A DNA stretch of 64,000 nt, taken from positions 124,001-188,000 of the IMG/VR virus record IMGVR_UViG_3300020195_000009; one strand, given 5' to 3'. A model generated the notes under the pieces. It was not told where the DNA came from and searched no databases. It saw nothing but the letters and a program-made list of their open reading frames with translations. This document shows, piece after piece, positions 55,516 through 63,224 of this stretch (position 1 is its first letter; each line of letters opens with the position of its first letter). A program made the position numbers and the translations under genes.

Positions 55516-57572
<2,057 letters not shown>

Positions 57573-57793: not shown

Positions 57794-59200
57794 TCATTCG
57801 GCCCCTTTGATGTTCGCGACCGGCATCATGCGGTGGGCGATCTTGGCGATGCCTTCATCTTCGAGAACCGCAAGAACGGCATCGAGGTCCTTGTAGACGT
57901 GCTTGCATTCGTCGACCGGGATGTTCTTGTGGTTCGAGATGATCCCTTCGATCGTCACACCTGCAAACGTTCGCTGGACGTCGTGCATCTCAGCGTTGAT
58001 TCGATCCTGCTTGGGACCCAGGCTCTTCTTTGCCTTGCTTCGCCCAAGAGTCCGACCCGACCCGTGGTTGACGGAGTACCCGGACTTGGAGGCTCCAGCC
58101 TGAGCGAATAGGATCGCAGCTCCGTCGTACATCGAACCGGGGATGCAGCACGGGTGTCCTGTGTCCGCCCACTTCGTCCCCACGAGATCGGGATGCCCAG
58201 CCGGGAAGGCACGGGTTGCCCCTTTACGGTGGACGAAGCCCTTCTTCGTGGTGCCGTCGGGGAGGACCAGGGTTTCCTCTTGGACGAGGTTGTGGCTGAT
58301 CTCGTAGTAGACCTCGCCCTCAACGTTGAAAACCTCTTGGAGAGCCTCCTGGATGCCTTTGACGATGACGTGGCGGTTGGCCACGGCAAAGTTGGCAGCG
58401 CTGTTGTGGTAGCGCCAGTAGTCCTTCCCAACCTGCTCGTCCATCCGAAGCCAGGACTCTTCACGTCGGTTACTGGGAAGACCACGGGCCTTGGCCCCCT
58501 CGAAGAAGAAGTGATCGGCGGTTTGCCAGCCGTACCCCCGGCTCCCGCAATGGATCATCACCCAGACTTCTGCTGTGTCCCGATCCACCTGCATCTCGAT
58601 GAAATGGTTGCCTCCGCCGACACTACCAAGCTGAGGGATGACCTTCGAGTAGGCCTTCTGGACCATCTTGAAGTCGGTACCCTCCGGGATCGGGATGTAC
58701 TGACGTTCGCATAGGTCGGCTGAGACCCCCAAGGCCTTGGCTCCGAACCGGAGGATCTCATCGGCCTGGTTCTGGTTGAAGTGGGGCATGAGGTTGGGTC
58801 GTTCGGACCCAACCCCGGTCGCGATTCGCTTCTCGACCTCCTTGACCCAACGCTCCCGAGGGTACCGACCCCGAACCCCACTCGCCGTGAGCCCAGGGAC
58901 CTTCATGTAAAGGACCCCACACGAAATGTCGTAACCAGAACCCGACTGGATGATCGTGTCCTCGGTTACAACGACCCCACCGACAGGAATTCCGTATCCG
59001 ATATGACAATCGGGCATAAGGTAGGCGCCGATGACTCCCTCATAGGAGGCGCTCGTCTTGATCTGCTCCCACATGTTCTCTTCCGAGGAGTTGTAGAGAT
59101 CCTCGGACAAAAAGGCGTGCGCCTCCACCTTCATCTCGCCGACTTTTGGCAAGACATAGTGGTTGGAGCCGACCTTTTGCGCTGTGTACTTGAGGGACAT
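57794..59200 (-). CDS. rtcB: RtcB RNA ligase
   Basis: MPDCHIGYGIPVG, GYDISCG, GSVGGGNHFIE, HCGSRG, HN, HRKGAT, PGSM, HGSGR, YKD. Confidence 0.95.
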   Translation of the reverse strand: MSLKYTAQKVGSNHYVLPKVGEMKVEAHAFLSEDLYNSSEENMWEQIKTSASYEGVIGAYLMPDCHIGYGIPVGGVVVTEDTIIQSGSGYDISCGVLYMKVPGLTASGVRGRYPRERWVKEVEKRIATGVGSERPNLMPHFNQNQADEILRFGAKALGVSADLCERQYIPIPEGTDFKMVQKAYSKVIPQLGSVGGGNHFIEMQVDRDTAEVWVMIHCGSRGYGWQTADHFFFEGAKARGLPSNRREESWLRMDEQVGKDYWRYHNSAANFAVANRHVIVKGIQEALQEVFNVEGEVYYEISHNLVQEETLVLPDGTTKKGFVHRKGATRAFPAGHPDLVGTKWADTGHPCCIPGSMYDGAAILFAQAGASKSGYSVNHGSGRTLGRSKAKKSLGPKQDRINAEMHDVQRTFAGVTIEGIISNHKNIPVDECKHVYKDLDAVLAVLEDEGIAKIAHRMMPVANIKGAE

Positions 59201-59279
59201 GTGTGATCCGATTTACGTGATGTTACTAGAGAAGCGGGAAGTTTGAGATTCGCTAACGTTGGGTTGGTTCTGCAACCAG

Positions 59280-59364
59280 CGGAAGATGGAGGTCCCGACC
59301 CCCTAAGCCTTTCAGCTCTCATCCGATTTCAAATCGGCTCCCGGCCCTGCCGAGTTCATCTTCC
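59280..59364 (-). tRNA. Non-canonical 8/4-fold tRNA-Ser(TGA)
   Basis: 8-bp acceptor GGAAGATG/CATCTTCC plus discriminator G; long D-stem CTCGGC/GCCGGG; anticodon loop TT-TGA-AA; long variable arm with GAAA loop; 4-bp T-stem GGGG/CCTC with loop GTCGGGA. Confidence 0.72.
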
Positions 59365-59368
59365 AGTT

Positions 59369-59839
59369 TCAGGCCACCCCGCGTGGGTTGCCCCAGGACT
59401 CGGAGAGCCGAGCCTTGAGAATGTTCATGAATAGACCACCCTGCTCCTTGGCATCATCGAGGGCGATGTGTGTGTGTCTGGCGTCCGGGAACCAGACCTT
59501 GGGCATGTTCCGCTTCGTGGACTGGCGGAACTCGATGCCAAGATACGCCGCCACGTAGGTCTTGATGTCCAAGGCGGAGAAGCTGAAAGGGCTCTCCAGC
59601 CCGCAGTTGACGATATACCAGTAGATGAACATGAAATCGAAGGTGGCTGGGTACCCGACGAACACAGGCTTCCCAGGCAAGGACTTCACCCAATTCACGT
59701 ACCGCTTCATCGTCTCCCCGATCGGCATCGGGTCTTTCCGGCAAGCCACCCAAGCGTTCGGGTTCTTGTCCCAAAACTCGCTCTTCGTGAGCGGGTGCAT
59801 CGAAGCCCCCGGAAAGTGCAACCCCCTCTCCCGTTTCAA
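59369..59839 (-). pseudogene. N-terminally truncated DEDD 3'-5' exo(ribo)nuclease (Rv2179c/RNase AS-like)
   Basis: ExoII (ATFDFMF), LDIKTY and ExoIII (HIALDDA..Q) are present. The ExoI DxE motif is absent and there is no room for it before the vWA stop. Confidence 0.6.
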
Positions 59840-59855
59840 CTTTGGTTACGCTGAT

Positions 59856-61445
59856 TTACCAGCGCTTGCTGCGGACCTTACCGACTTTTGCCTTGGAGGG
59901 CTCCGCAGGTGAGGCCGAGAGGGGCTCCCCTGAGGGTGCTACTAGGGACGGCCCCAGAGAGACCCCCCCAAGCAAGATGCTACCTCCGGCGCCATCCCCC
60001 ACCCCGCCGCTCCACGAGCCCCCTACGAGACCCCCAAGGTCGACGGGCGGGGCCGGGACTGCCGGGACTGCCGGGTCTGGTACCACCGGACCCGTGAACT
60101 CCTGGACCATCATGTCCTGCTGGGCGTTCGAGACCGAGTAGTTGTTCGAGACGAGGACCTCTTGATCCTCGGATGCCAGGCCGGAAGCTCGAAGGCCCCG
60201 CGTCATGGCCCTCCTCATCCCTGCCCGGTTTCCAGAGGTATCTCGATAGGAATCCTGGTTCAGATACATGGCGTTGACGTGCCCAGCAACAGCGGCAACA
60301 CCGACATGCCCTCGGGTATTAATCTCACCCCGAACATCCGCTAGAGCCGCCGCAGCCGCCACGAAGTTGCCACCACGGGCAAACTTCTCGGCTTCGACCT
60401 GAGCTTCCACGAGTTGGGCTCGGGCCACGACCTCATCGACTTCCTTCGTGGGGGTCTTCTGCTCGTCCCCGGCCTTGACGAACTGAACTTTAGCCTTGGC
60501 TTCGGCCGTCTTTGTGACGAGCTTCCCATCGGCGTCGATGACCTGGTACTTGAGCTTCACGTCAACAGCGTTGACCTGACGAGGCCCTGGTTGCTTCTGG
60601 GAGGCCAGCTTCACCATCAAGACGAGGTTCACATTCTCCTCGCTGAGAATGTGTGGAATCTTGACCTGAACTTCACCCGTGGTCTCCTCTTCGACATCGG
60701 CATCCGAGAGGACTTTTGTAACGAGGTGCCCGTTGTGAGGAATCACCTCAATCACGACGTCTTGAGCGTAGGTGGAAAGCAGACCCCCAAGCTCCTTCCC
60801 GAAGGCGGCAAGAGCCCCATCCGGGTCTCGGACGTAAGCGTAGTTGCCGTTCCCCTTCGTGGAGAGAGCCTGTAGGAGGTCTTGGTTGGCGTCGTCGCCG
60901 TACCCGAAGGCGGACACAGACGCCCTCCCAGCCTGCTTCTCCAGAAGACCATTCAAGCCCACAGGGTCCGTCACGCCATGGGTAGGCTGACCGTCCGTGA
61001 ACATGATGACCCGGACGAGGGTAGCCTCGGGAAGGTCCATCTCGTTCGCCGTTTGGAGACCGAGGAGCATCCCCGACGAGAAGTTGGTACCGCCTTCGAC
61101 CTTGAACCGGCCGACGAGGGCTTTGAGAGCCTCCTTGTTCTCGGGGATCATCTTCACCGGCTTGGCGTCGACACGAGCCGAATTGGAGAAGCTGATAATA
61201 CCGAGGTAATCCTCGGAGGAGAGGTGCTCAATGAGCTTCAGGATTGACTGCTTGGCGTAGGCCAGCTTGTCACCACCCATCGACCCCGAGATGTCGAGGA
61301 CCGGGAGGATGCAAAGCGGTGGGCGCTTGGCCTGCCAGTCGCCCTTGGGGGCGGTAAGGGAGACGACCAGGTGGAGGTCGTTGTCCTTGTCGTGGCGGAC
61401 GGATTCGTACGTGAATTGGGGCTTGATTTCCATGGGCTTCACCAT
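59856..61445 (-). CDS. von Willebrand factor A domain protein
   Basis: MIDAS LDISGSM, GGTN, FTDG, GYG, GNY; Ig-like flanks and low-complexity tail. Confidence 0.88.
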   Translation of the reverse strand: MVKPMEIKPQFTYESVRHDKDNDLHLVVSLTAPKGDWQAKRPPLCILPVLDISGSMGGDKLAYAKQSILKLIEHLSSEDYLGIISFSNSARVDAKPVKMIPENKEALKALVGRFKVEGGTNFSSGMLLGLQTANEMDLPEATLVRVIMFTDGQPTHGVTDPVGLNGLLEKQAGRASVSAFGYGDDANQDLLQALSTKGNGNYAYVRDPDGALAAFGKELGGLLSTYAQDVVIEVIPHNGHLVTKVLSDADVEEETTGEVQVKIPHILSEENVNLVLMVKLASQKQPGPRQVNAVDVKLKYQVIDADGKLVTKTAEAKAKVQFVKAGDEQKTPTKEVDEVVARAQLVEAQVEAEKFARGGNFVAAAAALADVRGEINTRGHVGVAAVAGHVNAMYLNQDSYRDTSGNRAGMRRAMTRGLRASGLASEDQEVLVSNNYSVSNAQQDMMVQEFTGPVVPDPAVPAVPAPPVDLGGLVGGSWSGGVGDGAGGSILLGGVSLGPSLVAPSGEPLSASPAEPSKAKVGKVRSKRW

Positions 61446-61677: not shown

Positions 61678-62241
61678 TTACGCTGCGTGAGCGCCTACCA
61701 CGTAGTAGCCGTCACCGTGCTTGTGGGCCTTCGAGAGGTCCAGGTACGGCCCCCACGCTTCCGGGATCTTCCCCGCATCAATGAAGACCGGGTGAAGGGG
61801 GAGTGCATGAGGCTTGGCCGGCTTGCGGAGGAGGGTCATCTTGGCCTGCTCTGGTGTGCGCCCGCCCTTTCGGTCGTTGCACGGATAGCAGGAGGTCACG
61901 ATGTTGTCCCAGACCGTCTTTCCACCCTGCTTACGCGGGAGGACGTGGTCGTAGTTCAACTCCCTCATGGTGTACCGACCGCCGCAATACTGGCAGCGGA
62001 AGCCGTCACGGGTGAAGACGTTGATGCGGGAGAACTTGACACCCTTCTTGAAACCGCGAACCTGCTCTTTGAGCTGGAGTACGGCGGGGATGAAATACGA
62101 GGTCGACGGAGAACTGACCGTCTCTTCGTAATCCTCCAACACGGTGGCCTTCTCCTGGTACATGAGGCAGATCGCCTCCTCCCAGTTCAGGATCGCGTGG
62201 GGGAGTCCCCAGGAATTCAGAAGCAGTGTACGAGTCTCCAT
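61678..62241 (-). CDS. HNH endonuclease (McrA/HNH_5-like)
   Basis: LLLN...W.EA, FSRINVFTRDGFRCQYCG, DHVLP..QGG..W.N.V.SC..CN..KG.RTP. Confidence 0.9.
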   Translation of the reverse strand: METRTLLLNSWGLPHAILNWEEAICLMYQEKATVLEDYEETVSSPSTSYFIPAVLQLKEQVRGFKKGVKFSRINVFTRDGFRCQYCGGRYTMRELNYDHVLPRKQGGKTVWDNIVTSCYPCNDRKGGRTPEQAKMTLLRKPAKPHALPLHPVFIDAGKIPEAWGPYLDLSKAHKHGDGYYVVGAHAA

Positions 62242-62560: not shown

Positions 62561-62578
62561 GACTTTAGACCTAATTTG

Positions 62579-62925
62579 TGGAGCTGCGGGGTACTGCCCC
62601 CCGGTCCTCCAGAAGTCCGATGACGCCTTCATTCACGTACGTAGTCGAAGTATCCCCCTCGACTGAGTTCGTAGATTCGGCCACGACCTATTCCCGCTGT
62701 TCCTCTCGACCTTTGCACCGCAAGACACGTGCTCGGTCCAGCCCTAGTGGTTGACAGGCTCTCCGCTACCAGGACGATCTGGCGGGAACCCGGCCTTCAG
62801 GCCGCCTTGAGAGCGGTGAAAGCGAAAGCGTTGTCGTTGGCGACTAGCTTGTGCTCGATTGAACAGGTCGAGCGCTGTTGTACGCAGATGTCACTTCTTT
62901 CCAGAGTCGAATCTATTTCAGCCCC
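62579..62925 (-). ncRNA. ssrA: tmRNA (one-piece), tag peptide ANDNAFAFTALKAA
   Basis: 5' GGGGCTGAAATAGATTCGAC; 3' CAGCTCC-A with G3-U wobble; resume codon GCC at 62841 to TGA at 62797; T-arm CGGGG-GGCAGTA-CCCCG. Confidence 0.9.
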
Positions 62926-62973
62926 TTTCGTACTCCTACCCTACACCAAGAAGCATCGAAGAGCTAGTGCTAG

Positions 62974-63058
62974 TACCCGTAGAGGGAGTCGAACCCTCAG
63001 CGCCCACAAGGAGCCGCGAATTTTAAATTCACTGCGTCTGCCATTCCGCCACACGGGC
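62974..63058 (-). tRNA. tRNA-Leu(TAA)
   Basis: GCCCGTG/TACGGGT acceptor, TGGCGGAATGGCAGACGC D-arm, loop TT-TAA-AA, long variable arm, GGTTCGACTCC. Confidence 0.9.
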
Positions 63059-63062
63059 CTAG

Positions 63063-63143
63063 TACTCAGGAAGGGGATCGAACCCTCACGGTTTTACCCG
63101 GTGGATTTTGAATCCACTGCGTCTGCCATTCCGCCACCTGAGC
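63063..63143 (-). tRNA. tRNA-Leu(CAA)
   Basis: GCTCAGG/CCTGAGT acceptor, loop TT-CAA-AA, variable arm CGGGTAAAACCG, GGTTCGATCCC. Confidence 0.9.
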
Positions 63144-63152
63144 AAGAAACAG

Positions 63153-63224
63153 TGCGCCATCTAGGAGTTGAACCTAGCCACCCCGCATATCAGACGGGGC
63201 CGTTCACCGGAAACATCATGGCGC
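63153..63224 (-). tRNA. Atypical tRNA-Ile(GAT)
   Basis: GCGCCAT/ATGGCGC acceptor plus A, loop CT-GAT-AT, T-arm CTAGG-TTCAACT-CCTAG; G at position 8 and an unusual D-arm. Confidence 0.7.

What the first reader, a model, noticed from the sequence alone, without database searches (positions are those of the whole stretch)
59280..59364. tRNA-Sec-like 8/4 cloverleaf with a serine anticodon directly upstream of rtcB
Seen: 8-bp acceptor (GGAAGATG/CATCTTCC), 4-bp T-stem, extended D-stem, long variable arm, G discriminator, TGA anticodon and a T-loop GTCGGGA lacking TTC. Known: 8/4 and 9/3 allo-tRNA folds have been described and are often missed by standard scanners; a long variable arm and G73 fit SerRS substrates; bacterial tRNA-Sec is 8/5 and can start GGAAGA. 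Inference: a nuclease-resistant replacement tRNA-Ser, or an RtcB substrate or decoy. A single anticodon change (TGA to TCA) would make it an opal reader.
Basis: partly seen in the sequence, partly recalled or inferred. Interest (0 to 1): 0.75.

Follow-up and report, generated by a model that had tools for sequence, protein, structure and literature searches.

The report
Phage serine tRNA with 8/4 cloverleaf
The 85-base element is a real but oddly shaped serine tRNA gene (anticodon UGA) of a jumbo phage; this shape was already described in phages in 2017, standard tRNA finders miss it, and its place next to the RNA ligase gene rtcB seems to come from lying at the edge of the phage's tRNA island.

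Summary
On the minus strand, window 59364 to 59280 folds into a cloverleaf. It has an 8-bp acceptor stem, a 6-bp D-stem, a UGA anticodon, a long variable arm, a 4-bp T-stem with loop GUCGGGA, and discriminator G. ARAGORN at default settings and Rfam both miss it.

It is not a chance fold. A covariance model built from this one sequence finds more than 60 distinct relatives in other large-phage contigs, and nearly all carry serine anticodons. The pair that defines the 8/4 layout (position 8 with 65) is Watson-Crick in 23 of 23 aligned sequences, with three pair types. The 7/5 alternative (49 with 65) pairs in only 2 of 23. RNAalifold predicts the same 8/4 cloverleaf on its own.

The phage (286 kb, about 47 other tRNAs and a tmRNA) has four 8/4 serine tRNAs: UGA, GGA, CGA and GCU. 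This element supplies the otherwise missing UGA isoacceptor.

(8/4) tRNA-Ser in phage tRNA clusters was described by Mukai et al. 2017, so this is a new member of a known kind. It sits within 1 kb of rtcB in only 3 of about 18 related phages. The decoy or nuclease-resistance ideas have no support here. Expression and charging remain untested.

The parts
59280..59364 (-). Whole (8/4) tRNA-Ser(UGA) gene, 85 nt including discriminator G (59280). No CCA is encoded; the 3' trailer is CUG.
   Evidence: Sequence. R1 self-score 117 bits, with homologs at E down to 1e-18. ARAGORN -ps80 calls tRNA-Ser(tga). Most other tRNAs of this phage also lack an encoded CCA.
59357..59364 (-). Acceptor stem, 5' strand GGAAGAUG (positions 1-8).
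   Evidence: Pairs with 59281-59288. G1:C72, G2:C71 and A3:U70 are invariant in 23 of 23 sequences. Pair 8:65 is GC16/AU5/CG2.
59281..59288 (-). Acceptor stem, 3' strand CAUCUUCC. Its first C (59288) is the partner of G8.
   Evidence: 8:65 is paired in 23 of 23 sequences, the rival 49:65 in 2 of 23.
59340..59354 (-). D-arm CUCGG(C) AGG (G)CCGGG: a tRNA-Sec-like long D-stem (5-6 bp) with a short loop that holds G18 G19.
   Evidence: In the family the 6-bp D-stem is 97% paired and all six pairs covary. G18 and G19 are nearly invariant.
59323..59337 (-). Anticodon arm CCGA UUUGAAA UCGG. The anticodon UGA is at 59331-59329, with U33 and A37 present.
   Evidence: U33 and A37 are invariant in A3. 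Anticodons across 64 family members are almost all serine.
59304..59321 (-). Long variable region: AUGA, then stem-loop GAGCU GAAA GGCUU, then A.
   Evidence: the variable-arm pairs covary, with 79-88% of cells paired.
59289..59303 (-). T-arm: 4-bp stem GGGG/CCUC and loop GUCGGGA (G54 U55 C56 G57 G58 G59 A60).
   Evidence: The T-stem is 96.7% paired with compensatory changes. The identical T-arm occurs in 26 distinct family members from viral contigs and genome or MAG contigs of 44-72% GC.
57794..59200 (-). rtcB (468 aa), starting 79 nt downstream of the tRNA on the same strand.
   Evidence: Pfam RtcB, E = 4.4e-86.
59369..59839 (-). Exonuclease-like ORF. Its stop codon lies 4 nt upstream of tRNA position 1.
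   Evidence: PHROG exonuclease families at 1.5e-5 and 6e-4. PDB 7t2s_A, a 3'-5' exonuclease, matches at 3.4e-10 but only over its residues 72-178. The same gene-then-tRNA-Ser(UGA) order is seen in L068.
62576..63224 (-). Start of the phage's main tRNA island inside the window: tmRNA, tRNA-Leu(UAA), tRNA-Leu(CAA) and tRNA-Ile(GAU). The island runs on to genome position 203829.

Best explanation
This is a genuine tRNA gene: the UGA isoacceptor of a phage-encoded set of four serine tRNAs that all use the non-canonical 8/4 cloverleaf. That fold has an 8-bp acceptor stem, a 4-bp T-stem, a tRNA-Sec-like 6-bp D-stem and a long variable arm.

Shown here: the fold, its conservation and covariation, the serine anticodon, and the fact that it completes the isoacceptor set.

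Inferred:
- It is transcribed on the minus strand together with the flanking exonuclease-like gene and rtcB. No promoter-like or terminator-like site was found around it.
- It is cut out by RNase P and by 3' processing enzymes.
- It receives CCA after transcription.
- It is serylated by the host SerRS, through the long variable arm, G73, G2:C71 and A3:U70.
- It reads UCA, and probably other UCN codons, during infection.

Its position beside rtcB reflects the edge of a tRNA, tmRNA and RNA-repair island rather than a dedicated partnership with rtcB.
For: 1. The cloverleaf is present and stable.

2. Model R1 finds homologs in 13 of 17 related jumbo-phage records and a second copy in the phage's own genome. 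It also finds further members in unrelated viral contigs and a few MAG contigs.

3. Of 64 distinct 8/4-type members, anticodons are UGA 17, CGA 17, GGA 15, GCU 13, ACU 1 and one non-serine. The discriminator is G in 54 and U in 9. Pair 8:65 is GC 40, AU 10, UA 7, CG 6, GU 1.

4. On an independent MAFFT alignment of 23 sequences, 91.5% of cells are paired, against 69.5% in shuffles and at most 53% when partners are slid. 24 of 28 pairs show double changes. Pair 8:65 holds in 23 of 23 sequences, the rival 49:65 in 2 of 23.

5. RNAalifold predicts the same 8/4 cloverleaf unaided.

6. The tertiary and decoding invariants G18 G19, U33, A37, U55 and C56 are kept.

7. The phage's other serine tRNAs (GGA, CGA, GCU at genome 199086-199415) have the same architecture. 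The CGA and GCU genes hit Rfam tRNA-Sec best, at 40 and 35 bits, below its cut-off.

8. Without this gene the phage's near-complete tRNA set would have no reader for UCA, which makes up 9.7% of Ser codons in its long ORFs.

9. Mukai et al. 2017 reported (8/4) tRNA-Ser in phage tRNA clusters and showed that 8/4 allo-tRNAs are processed, serylated and used by E. coli ribosomes (PMC5389517).
Against: - There is no direct evidence of transcription, processing or aminoacylation. The two RNA-library runs that hold part of it give only low-depth contigs from relatives, and these could be DNA carry-over.
- The T-loop has G54 and G58 where almost all tRNAs have T54 and A58.
- Position 27:43 is a G.A mismatch, so only 4 Watson-Crick pairs close the anticodon loop.
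- The D-loop may be only 3 nt.
- Mukai et al. also found allo-tRNA-like genes that were inactive in E. coli.
- No SerRS-type core or CCA-adding enzyme was found in the held 60% of the genome, and the host is unknown, so charging cannot be argued from a cognate enzyme.
Confidence: 0.85

Rival explanations
1. It is a decaying or inactive tRNA-like gene (a pseudogene), like the inactive allo-tRNA-like sequences reported earlier, left at the edge of the tRNA island.
For: - The T-loop is non-canonical (G54/G58), 27:43 is a G.A mismatch and the D-loop is very short.
- ARAGORN and Rfam do not see it.
- It sits 3.2 kb from the main array.
- Mukai et al. 2017 describe allo-tRNA pseudogenes and species inactive in E. 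coli.
Against: - The same GUCGGGA T-arm recurs in 26 distinct genes from contigs of 44-72% GC, with compensatory changes in all other stems and in the T-stem itself.
- All decoding and tertiary invariants are kept.
- The 27:43 mismatch is a family trait, unpaired in 18 of 23 sequences, not a private lesion.
- It is the only UCA reader in an otherwise near-complete phage tRNA set.
Confidence: 0.07
2. It is a tRNA-like cis element or RNA partner of RtcB: a processing signal that frees the rtcB message, or a substrate, decoy or regulator for the ligase, and not a decoding tRNA.
For: - It lies 79 nt upstream of rtcB on the same strand, with no promoter-like or terminator-like site between the genes.
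- Two relatives, G001 and G013, also have tRNA-Ser genes within 1 kb upstream of rtcB.
- In all relatives checked, rtcB lies within about 26 kb of the serine tRNA genes.
Against: - In most relatives no tRNA lies within 3 kb of rtcB, and the orthologous tRNA-Ser(UGA) sits in tandem Ser tRNA arrays 10-26 kb away.
- Contigs that carry the same T-arm show no rtcB in the held flanks, apart from the close relatives.
- Contigs of relatives in other samples lose similarity to the window exactly at the tRNA's 3' end, so the tRNA-rtcB junction is not conserved.
- There is no YrlA or Y-RNA match and no Ro/TROVE protein nearby.
- RNase P cleavage of a co-transcribed tRNA would still split the transcript, so this reading overlaps with the main one as a by-product.
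Confidence: 0.05
3. It is a selenocysteine or opal-suppressor tRNA, or a recent derivative of one.
For: - Its 8-bp acceptor stem and long D-stem resemble tRNA-Sec. From memory, E. coli selC also starts GGAAGAU.
- Sister genes in the same phage hit Rfam tRNA-Sec best.
Against: - The anticodon is UGA, not UCA, and none of the 64 family members has UCA.
- The acceptor branch is 8+4 = 12 bp, not 13.
- There is no Rfam tRNA-Sec hit even at E<=10.
Confidence: 0.01

Closest known systems
[quoted passage not shown] 2017 (Nucleic Acids Res 45:2776; PMC5389517)
   Same: - 12-bp acceptor branch split 8+4.
- Long variable arm.
- G73 discriminator.
- tRNA-Sec-like long D-stem with a very short loop.
- Serine anticodon.
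- Encoded by uncultured phages with large tRNA sets.
- Picked up weakly, or not at all, by standard tRNA models.
   Different: - The T-loop here is GUCGGGA (G54/G58). The main text of that paper does not discuss T-loops, and its figures and supplement were not available, so I cannot say whether this variant was shown.
- The anticodon stem has only 4 Watson-Crick pairs plus G.A, whereas allo-tRNAs are described as having longer anticodon stems.
- The phages reported there also carried (8/4) tRNA-His. This phage's tRNA-His is the ordinary type with G-1.
Bacterial tRNA-Sec (selC; Rfam RF01852)
   Same: - 8-bp acceptor stem.
- 6-bp D-stem with a tiny loop.
- Long variable arm.
- G73.
- Serylated by SerRS (for tRNA-Sec, established knowledge).
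   Different: - tRNA-Sec has a 5-bp T-stem, giving a 13-bp branch.
- tRNA-Sec has a UCA anticodon.
- This element gives no RF01852 match at E<=10.
Canonical type-II bacterial tRNA-Ser (7/5; Rfam RF00005)
   Same: - Serine anticodon.
- Long variable arm.
- G73, G2:C71 and A3:U70.
- G18 G19, U33, U55 and C56.
- Related phages carry canonical tRNA-Ser(UGA) genes as well, for example L027:1688-1775 and L041:1501-1584.
   Different: - G8 pairs with C65 instead of a free U8.
- 4-bp T-stem.
- 6-bp D-stem instead of 3-4 bp with a large loop.
- G54/G58 in the T-loop.
- No RF00005 match at E<=10 and no default ARAGORN call.
YrlA / bacterial Y RNA tRNA mimics encoded near rtcB and rsr (considered from memory)
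   Same: A tRNA-like RNA encoded next to an rtcB gene.
   Different: - No RF02553 match at this site.
- No Ro/TROVE protein nearby. The neighbouring 529-aa protein has only an N-terminal VWA domain.
- The element has a complete anticodon arm and acceptor stem, like a decoding tRNA.

Membership tests
(8/4) tRNA-Ser / (8/4) allo-tRNA (Mukai et al. 2017) | 12-bp acceptor branch made of an 8-bp acceptor stem and a 4-bp T-stem | tested here: met
   In the window G8:C65 pairs and A49.C65 does not. In the family 8:65 is Watson-Crick in 23 of 23 sequences (GC16/AU5/CG2), against 2 of 23 for 49:65. Over 64 members all four Watson-Crick types occur. RNAalifold gives 8/4 unaided.
(8/4) tRNA-Ser / (8/4) allo-tRNA (Mukai et al. 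2017) | Long variable arm | tested here: met
   There are 18 nt between the anticodon stem and the T-stem, with a 5-bp stem and a GAAA loop. The pairs covary in the family.
(8/4) tRNA-Ser / (8/4) allo-tRNA (Mukai et al. 2017) | Discriminator G73 (or U73) | tested here: met
   G at 59280. In the family the discriminator is G in 54, U in 9 and A in 1.
(8/4) tRNA-Ser / (8/4) allo-tRNA (Mukai et al. 2017) | tRNA-Sec-like D-arm: long stem and tetraloop | tested here: met
   The 6-bp stem is 97% paired and every pair covaries. The loop is 3-4 nt, and in the window it is 3 nt (AGG) if C16:G20 forms.
(8/4) tRNA-Ser / (8/4) allo-tRNA (Mukai et al. 2017) | Anticodon stem longer than in canonical tRNAs | tested here: not met
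   The window has 4 Watson-Crick pairs plus G27.A43. Pair 27:43 is unpaired in 18 of 23 family members. This is a described tendency of the group, not its defining trait.
(8/4) tRNA-Ser / (8/4) allo-tRNA (Mukai et al. 2017) | Serine anticodon (for the tRNA-Ser subgroup) | tested here: met
   UGA at 59331-59329. 63 of 64 family members have Ser anticodons.
(8/4) tRNA-Ser / (8/4) allo-tRNA (Mukai et al. 2017) | Y20 (pyrimidine at position 20), the criterion for counting an (8/4) tRNA-Ser as an allo-tRNA | tested here: inconclusive
   The base after G18 G19 is G in the window and varies in the family, because it pairs with position 16. The paper's numbering could not be checked without its figures.
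(8/4) tRNA-Ser / (8/4) allo-tRNA (Mukai et al. 2017) | Processed, serylated and used in translation | not testable with these tools
   The RNA-library contigs are uninformative. No aminoacylation data exist for this sequence.
Bacterial tRNA-Sec (RF01852) | 13-bp acceptor branch (8/5), UCA anticodon, and a score above the Rfam cut-off | tested here: not met
   The branch is 8/4, the anticodon is UGA, and there is no RF01852 match at E<=10.
Canonical tRNA (RF00005, 7/5 cloverleaf) | 7-bp acceptor and 5-bp T-stem, free U8, a T54/A58 T-loop, and a score above the Rfam cut-off | tested here: not met
   There is no RF00005 match at E<=10 and no ARAGORN call at default or 90% thresholds. G8 is paired, and positions 54/58 are G/G. 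G18 G19, U33, U55 and C56 are present.
YrlA / Y RNA-like tRNA mimic | Match to RF02553 and a neighbouring Ro (TROVE) gene | tested here: not met
   No match at this site. No TROVE domain in the neighbouring proteins.

The most novel reading that the evidence does not exclude
The whole set of serine tRNAs in this phage group has switched to an 8/4, tRNA-Sec-like body, and many members carry a G54/G58 T-loop that cannot form the usual T54-A58 pair. This altered body could be a counter-defence adaptation. It might let the phage's Ser tRNAs escape host enzymes that recognise the canonical elbow or acceptor-T geometry, such as tRNA-cleaving defence nucleases or modification enzymes, while still being charged by SerRS, which tolerates 8/4, 8/5 and 9/4 bodies. 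The nearby RtcB ligase would be the repair arm of the same module.
Probability: 0.1. Interest if true: 0.6.

Novelty: new member of a known kind. Interest (0 to 1): 0.3.

Why it matters
For annotation, two of this phage's four serine tRNAs (UGA and GGA) are invisible to ARAGORN and Rfam. Its tRNA set therefore looks as if it lacks readers for UCA and UCC/UCU when it does not. The same blind spot will affect tRNA counts, codon-supply analyses and host-independence estimates for many jumbo phages.

For biology, the data add about 60 natural 8/4 tRNA-Ser sequences with clear covariation to a class known from few examples. They also show a recurrent G54/G58 T-loop variant, and they show 7/5 and 8/4 serine tRNAs coexisting in related phages. 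That is useful material for studying how the tRNA body can change without loss of identity, and as scaffolds for tRNA engineering.

It does not change what is known about RtcB.

Tried and rejected
1. Plus-strand reading. The loop then shows TCA, but 34 nt precede the anticodon arm and only 19 nt follow it, so the arm order does not fit a tRNA. All model and ARAGORN hits are on the minus strand.

2. Intergenic terminator or plain hairpin. No terminator-like or promoter-like site lies in 58900-60100, and the element has four arms.

3. YrlA or Y-RNA mimic partnered with Ro. No Rfam match and no TROVE protein.

4. Conservation directly upstream of rtcB. The upstream regions of 20 rtcB relatives are unrelated to each other, so homologs were sought genome-wide with a covariance model instead.

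5. blastn of the locus against GenBank phages found no match. The RtcB protein is below 35% identical to those of cultured phages.

6. A repeated motif in the 79-nt spacer before rtcB. Some 9-mers are enriched in the genome, but there are no longer repeats. Dropped.

7. Expression. Two RNA-library runs hold part of the tRNA, but only as short low-depth contigs from relatives that diverge at the tRNA's 3' end. This is no evidence of transcription or of mature ends.

8. Cellular genomes. A pattern scan returned 107 stretches, about as many as my rough estimate of chance matches, and 80 of them were fetched. Only 6 contigs, all MAG contigs and several of them short, held true family members, in tandem clusters typical of phage tRNA arrays.

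9. A phage-encoded SerRS or CCA-adding enzyme. None was found in the held 286 kb, which is about 60% of the genome.

Full report
**What is there**

Window 59280-59364 lies in a 168-nt gap between two minus-strand genes. Upstream is an exonuclease-like ORF (59369-59839), whose stop codon lies 4 nt before the element. Downstream is rtcB (57794-59200; Pfam RtcB E = 4.4e-86), which starts 79 nt after it.

- an 8-bp acceptor stem
- an extended D-stem
- the UGA anticodon (59331-59329)
- a long variable arm
- a 4-bp T-stem with loop GUCGGGA
- discriminator G

On the plus strand the arm order does not fit a tRNA.

The single-sequence fold gives a four-arm cloverleaf (-36.3 kcal/mol, z = -2.98). It uses a 7+6 register for the acceptor and T helices rather than 8+4.

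**Standard scanners**

- ARAGORN at default settings finds only three tRNAs in the window, at 62973-63224.
- Rfam finds a tmRNA (62576-62925) and two tRNAs.
- Rfam still reports no tRNA, tRNA-Sec or YrlA match in 59150-59450 at E<=10.
- ARAGORN calls the element tRNA-Ser(tga) only when thresholds are lowered to 80%. At that setting it also makes an implausible overlapping call on the other strand, so this alone proves nothing.

**Where the window comes from**

The window is part of a 286-kb IMG/VR virus record, estimated at about 60% complete, from a microbial-mat metagenome. ARAGORN finds 47 tRNAs in it, nearly all in one minus-strand island at genome positions 186973-203829. That island starts 3.2 kb from the element, right after the tmRNA. 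The only serine isoacceptors ARAGORN finds are GCU and CGA.

**Comparative evidence**

The regions directly upstream of rtcB in 20 related viral contigs are unrelated to one another.

- 13 records have matches, at E down to 1e-18, and often several per genome.
- The phage's own genome holds a second hit at 199241-199325, between the two ARAGORN-called Ser tRNAs. It is a tRNA-Ser(GGA), also missed by ARAGORN and by Rfam at E<=10.
- All four Ser genes of this phage (UGA, GGA, CGA, GCU) share the same build: position 8 pairs with position 65, the T-stem has 4 bp, and the D-stem has 6 bp with a 3-4-nt loop.
- The CGA and GCU genes score best against Rfam tRNA-Sec (40 and 35 bits, cut-off 47), not against the tRNA model. 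Mukai et al. first noticed such tRNAs in the same way.

**Test of 8/4 against 7/5**

I used an independent MAFFT alignment of 23 distinct members (A3).

| Measure | 8/4 structure | Control or rival |
|---|---|---|
| Cells paired | 91.5% | 69.5% in shuffles; at most 53% with slid partners |
| Pairs with double changes | 24 of 28 | 16.4 on average in shuffles |
| Diagnostic pair | 8:65 Watson-Crick in 23 of 23 (GC 16, AU 5, CG 2) | 49:65 pairs in 2 of 23 |

RNAalifold, given no structure, returns the same 8/4 cloverleaf: an 8-bp acceptor stem, a 6-bp D-stem with a 4-column (3-4-nt) loop, a 4-bp anticodon stem with a 7-nt loop, a variable arm, and a 4-bp T-stem with a 7-nt loop.

G1:C72, G2:C71, A3:U70, U33, A37, U55 and C56 are invariant, and G18 G19 are nearly so.

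**Wider distribution**

A pattern scan for the window's exact T-arm found 27 viral stretches. The model confirmed 49 family hits in them, 31 of them distinct. The same scan of cellular genomes returned 107 stretches, about as many as my rough estimate of chance matches, and 80 of them were fetched. Only six MAG contigs held true members, in tandem clusters that look like phage tRNA arrays.

Pooling all hits gives 64 distinct 8/4-type sequences:
- Pair 8:65: GC 40, AU 10, UA 7, CG 6, GU 1.
- Anticodons: UGA 17, CGA 17, GGA 15, GCU 13, ACU 1 and one non-serine. None is UCA.
- Discriminator: G 54, U 9, A 1.
- T-loop positions 54/58: G/G 28, U/A 23, A/A 12. The G/G count is inflated by the pattern used.
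- G54 is always accompanied by G58.
- T-stems next to the GUCGGGA loop show compensatory changes that fit the 8/4 register. For example, GAGG/CCUC in L047:2137 fits 8/4 but not the shifted register of the single-sequence fold.

**Relation to rtcB**

tRNA-Ser genes lie within 1 kb upstream of rtcB only in the window, G001 and G013. In the other relatives the serine tRNAs are about 5-26 kb away (coordinates), and no tRNA lies within 3 kb of rtcB.

In G012 and G014 the closest ortholog of the element (80 bits, the same T-arm) sits in a tandem CGA-UGA-GCU array.

The exonuclease-like gene is a neighbour of a tRNA-Ser(UGA) in one further contig, L068. Contigs of relatives from other samples match the tRNA and that gene but lose similarity exactly at the tRNA's 3' end, at 59278/59279.

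So rtcB belongs to the general neighbourhood of the tRNA island, which makes sense for an RNA-repair ligase. The tight adjacency here is not conserved.

**Function**

The simplest reading is a decoding tRNA-Ser(UGA).
- It completes a set of four isoacceptors that covers all six Ser codons.
- UCA makes up 9.7% of Ser codons in the phage's long ORFs.
- Like most tRNAs of this phage it has no encoded CCA, and its 3' trailer (CUG) matches those of the sister Ser genes.
- No promoter-like or terminator-like site flanks it, so co-transcription with its neighbours and excision by RNase P and 3' processing is inferred.
- No SerRS-type core or CCA-adding enzyme was found in the held part of the genome, so host enzymes are presumed.
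- Serylation is plausible because the elements SerRS uses are present: the long variable arm, G73, and (from memory of the E. coli identity set) G2:C71 and A3:U70.
- SerRS is known to accept 8/4, 8/5 and 9/4 bodies, and 8/4 allo-tRNAs worked in E. coli translation (PMC5389517).

None of this was measured for this sequence. The RNA-library contigs do not show transcription.

**Comparison with what is known**

Mukai et al. [quoted passage not shown] The element meets the defining features of that group: the 8/4 branch, long variable arm, G73, long D-stem and Ser anticodon. It does not meet the described "longer anticodon stem".

- It is not a tRNA-Sec: the branch is 12 bp rather than 13, the anticodon is UGA, and there is no Rfam hit.
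- It is not a canonical 7/5 tRNA.
- This phage's tRNA-His is the ordinary kind with G-1.
- A literature search found no later work on phage 8/4 tRNA-Ser.
- The main text of Mukai et al. 2017 does not discuss T-loops. Its figures and supplement were not available, so I cannot say whether the G54/G58 variant is new.

**Verdict**

The structural interpretation is right. The functional speculations (nuclease-resistant replacement, RtcB substrate or decoy, near-opal reader) are unsupported. This is a new member of a known kind, and its interest lies mainly in annotation and in the natural diversity of the tRNA body.

Noticed in passing
L043:1501-1585 (-) = own genome 199241-199325, outside the window: A second 8/4 tRNA-Ser (anticodon GGA) is missed by ARAGORN and by Rfam at E<=10. 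It sits between the called tRNA-Ser(CGA) and tRNA-Ser(GCU). All four Ser tRNAs of the phage are 8/4.
   Followed up: yes
window 62576-62925 (-): The phage encodes a tmRNA (Rfam RF00023, 76.9 bits), directly followed by the first tRNAs of a 17-kb tRNA island (62973-63224 in the window).
   Followed up: partly
own genome 239885-239962 and 241106-241182 (-), outside the window: There are two tRNAs with a CUA anticodon, which would read the amber codon. In a crude ORF count, coverage of the last 36 kb of the record rises from 0.57 to 0.84 if TAG is read as sense. This hints at TAG recoding in part of the genome.
   Followed up: partly
own genome (whole); L002:2881-2955: ARAGORN finds tRNAs for 19 amino acids but no tRNA-Trp in the held 286 kb. 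A relative (G001) has tRNA-Trp(CCA) directly upstream of its rtcB. I did not check whether a non-canonical Trp tRNA is hidden here.
   Followed up: no
window 59369-59839 (-): The exonuclease-like ORF matches only residues 72-178 of a 187-aa 3'-5' exonuclease (PDB 7t2s_A, E = 3.4e-10), so the N-terminal part of the fold seems to be missing. The gene is nevertheless conserved at 63-64% identity in L068 and L050, and in L068 it again sits just upstream of a tRNA-Ser(UGA).
   Followed up: partly
L031, L032, L033, L039:1406-1493: Related jumbo phages also carry Ser tRNAs with C8 and a paired 49:65, that is 7/5-type, and fully canonical U8 tRNA-Ser genes (L027:1688-1775, L041:1409-1584). So 7/5 and 8/4 serine tRNAs coexist within one phage group.
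   Followed up: partly
window 59278-59279: Contigs of relatives in two RNA-library runs match the tRNA, and one also matches the gene upstream. They lose all similarity exactly at the tRNA's 3' end, so the tRNA edge is a synteny breakpoint.
   Followed up: partly
window 55516-57195 (-): The phage encodes a GroEL-type chaperonin (Pfam Cpn60_TCP1, E = 1.1e-61) two small ORFs downstream of rtcB.
   Followed up: no
window 59856-61445 (-) and 61678-62241 (-): A 529-aa protein with an N-terminal VWA domain (no TROVE domain, so not Ro) and an HNH endonuclease lie between the tRNA and the tmRNA.
   Followed up: no
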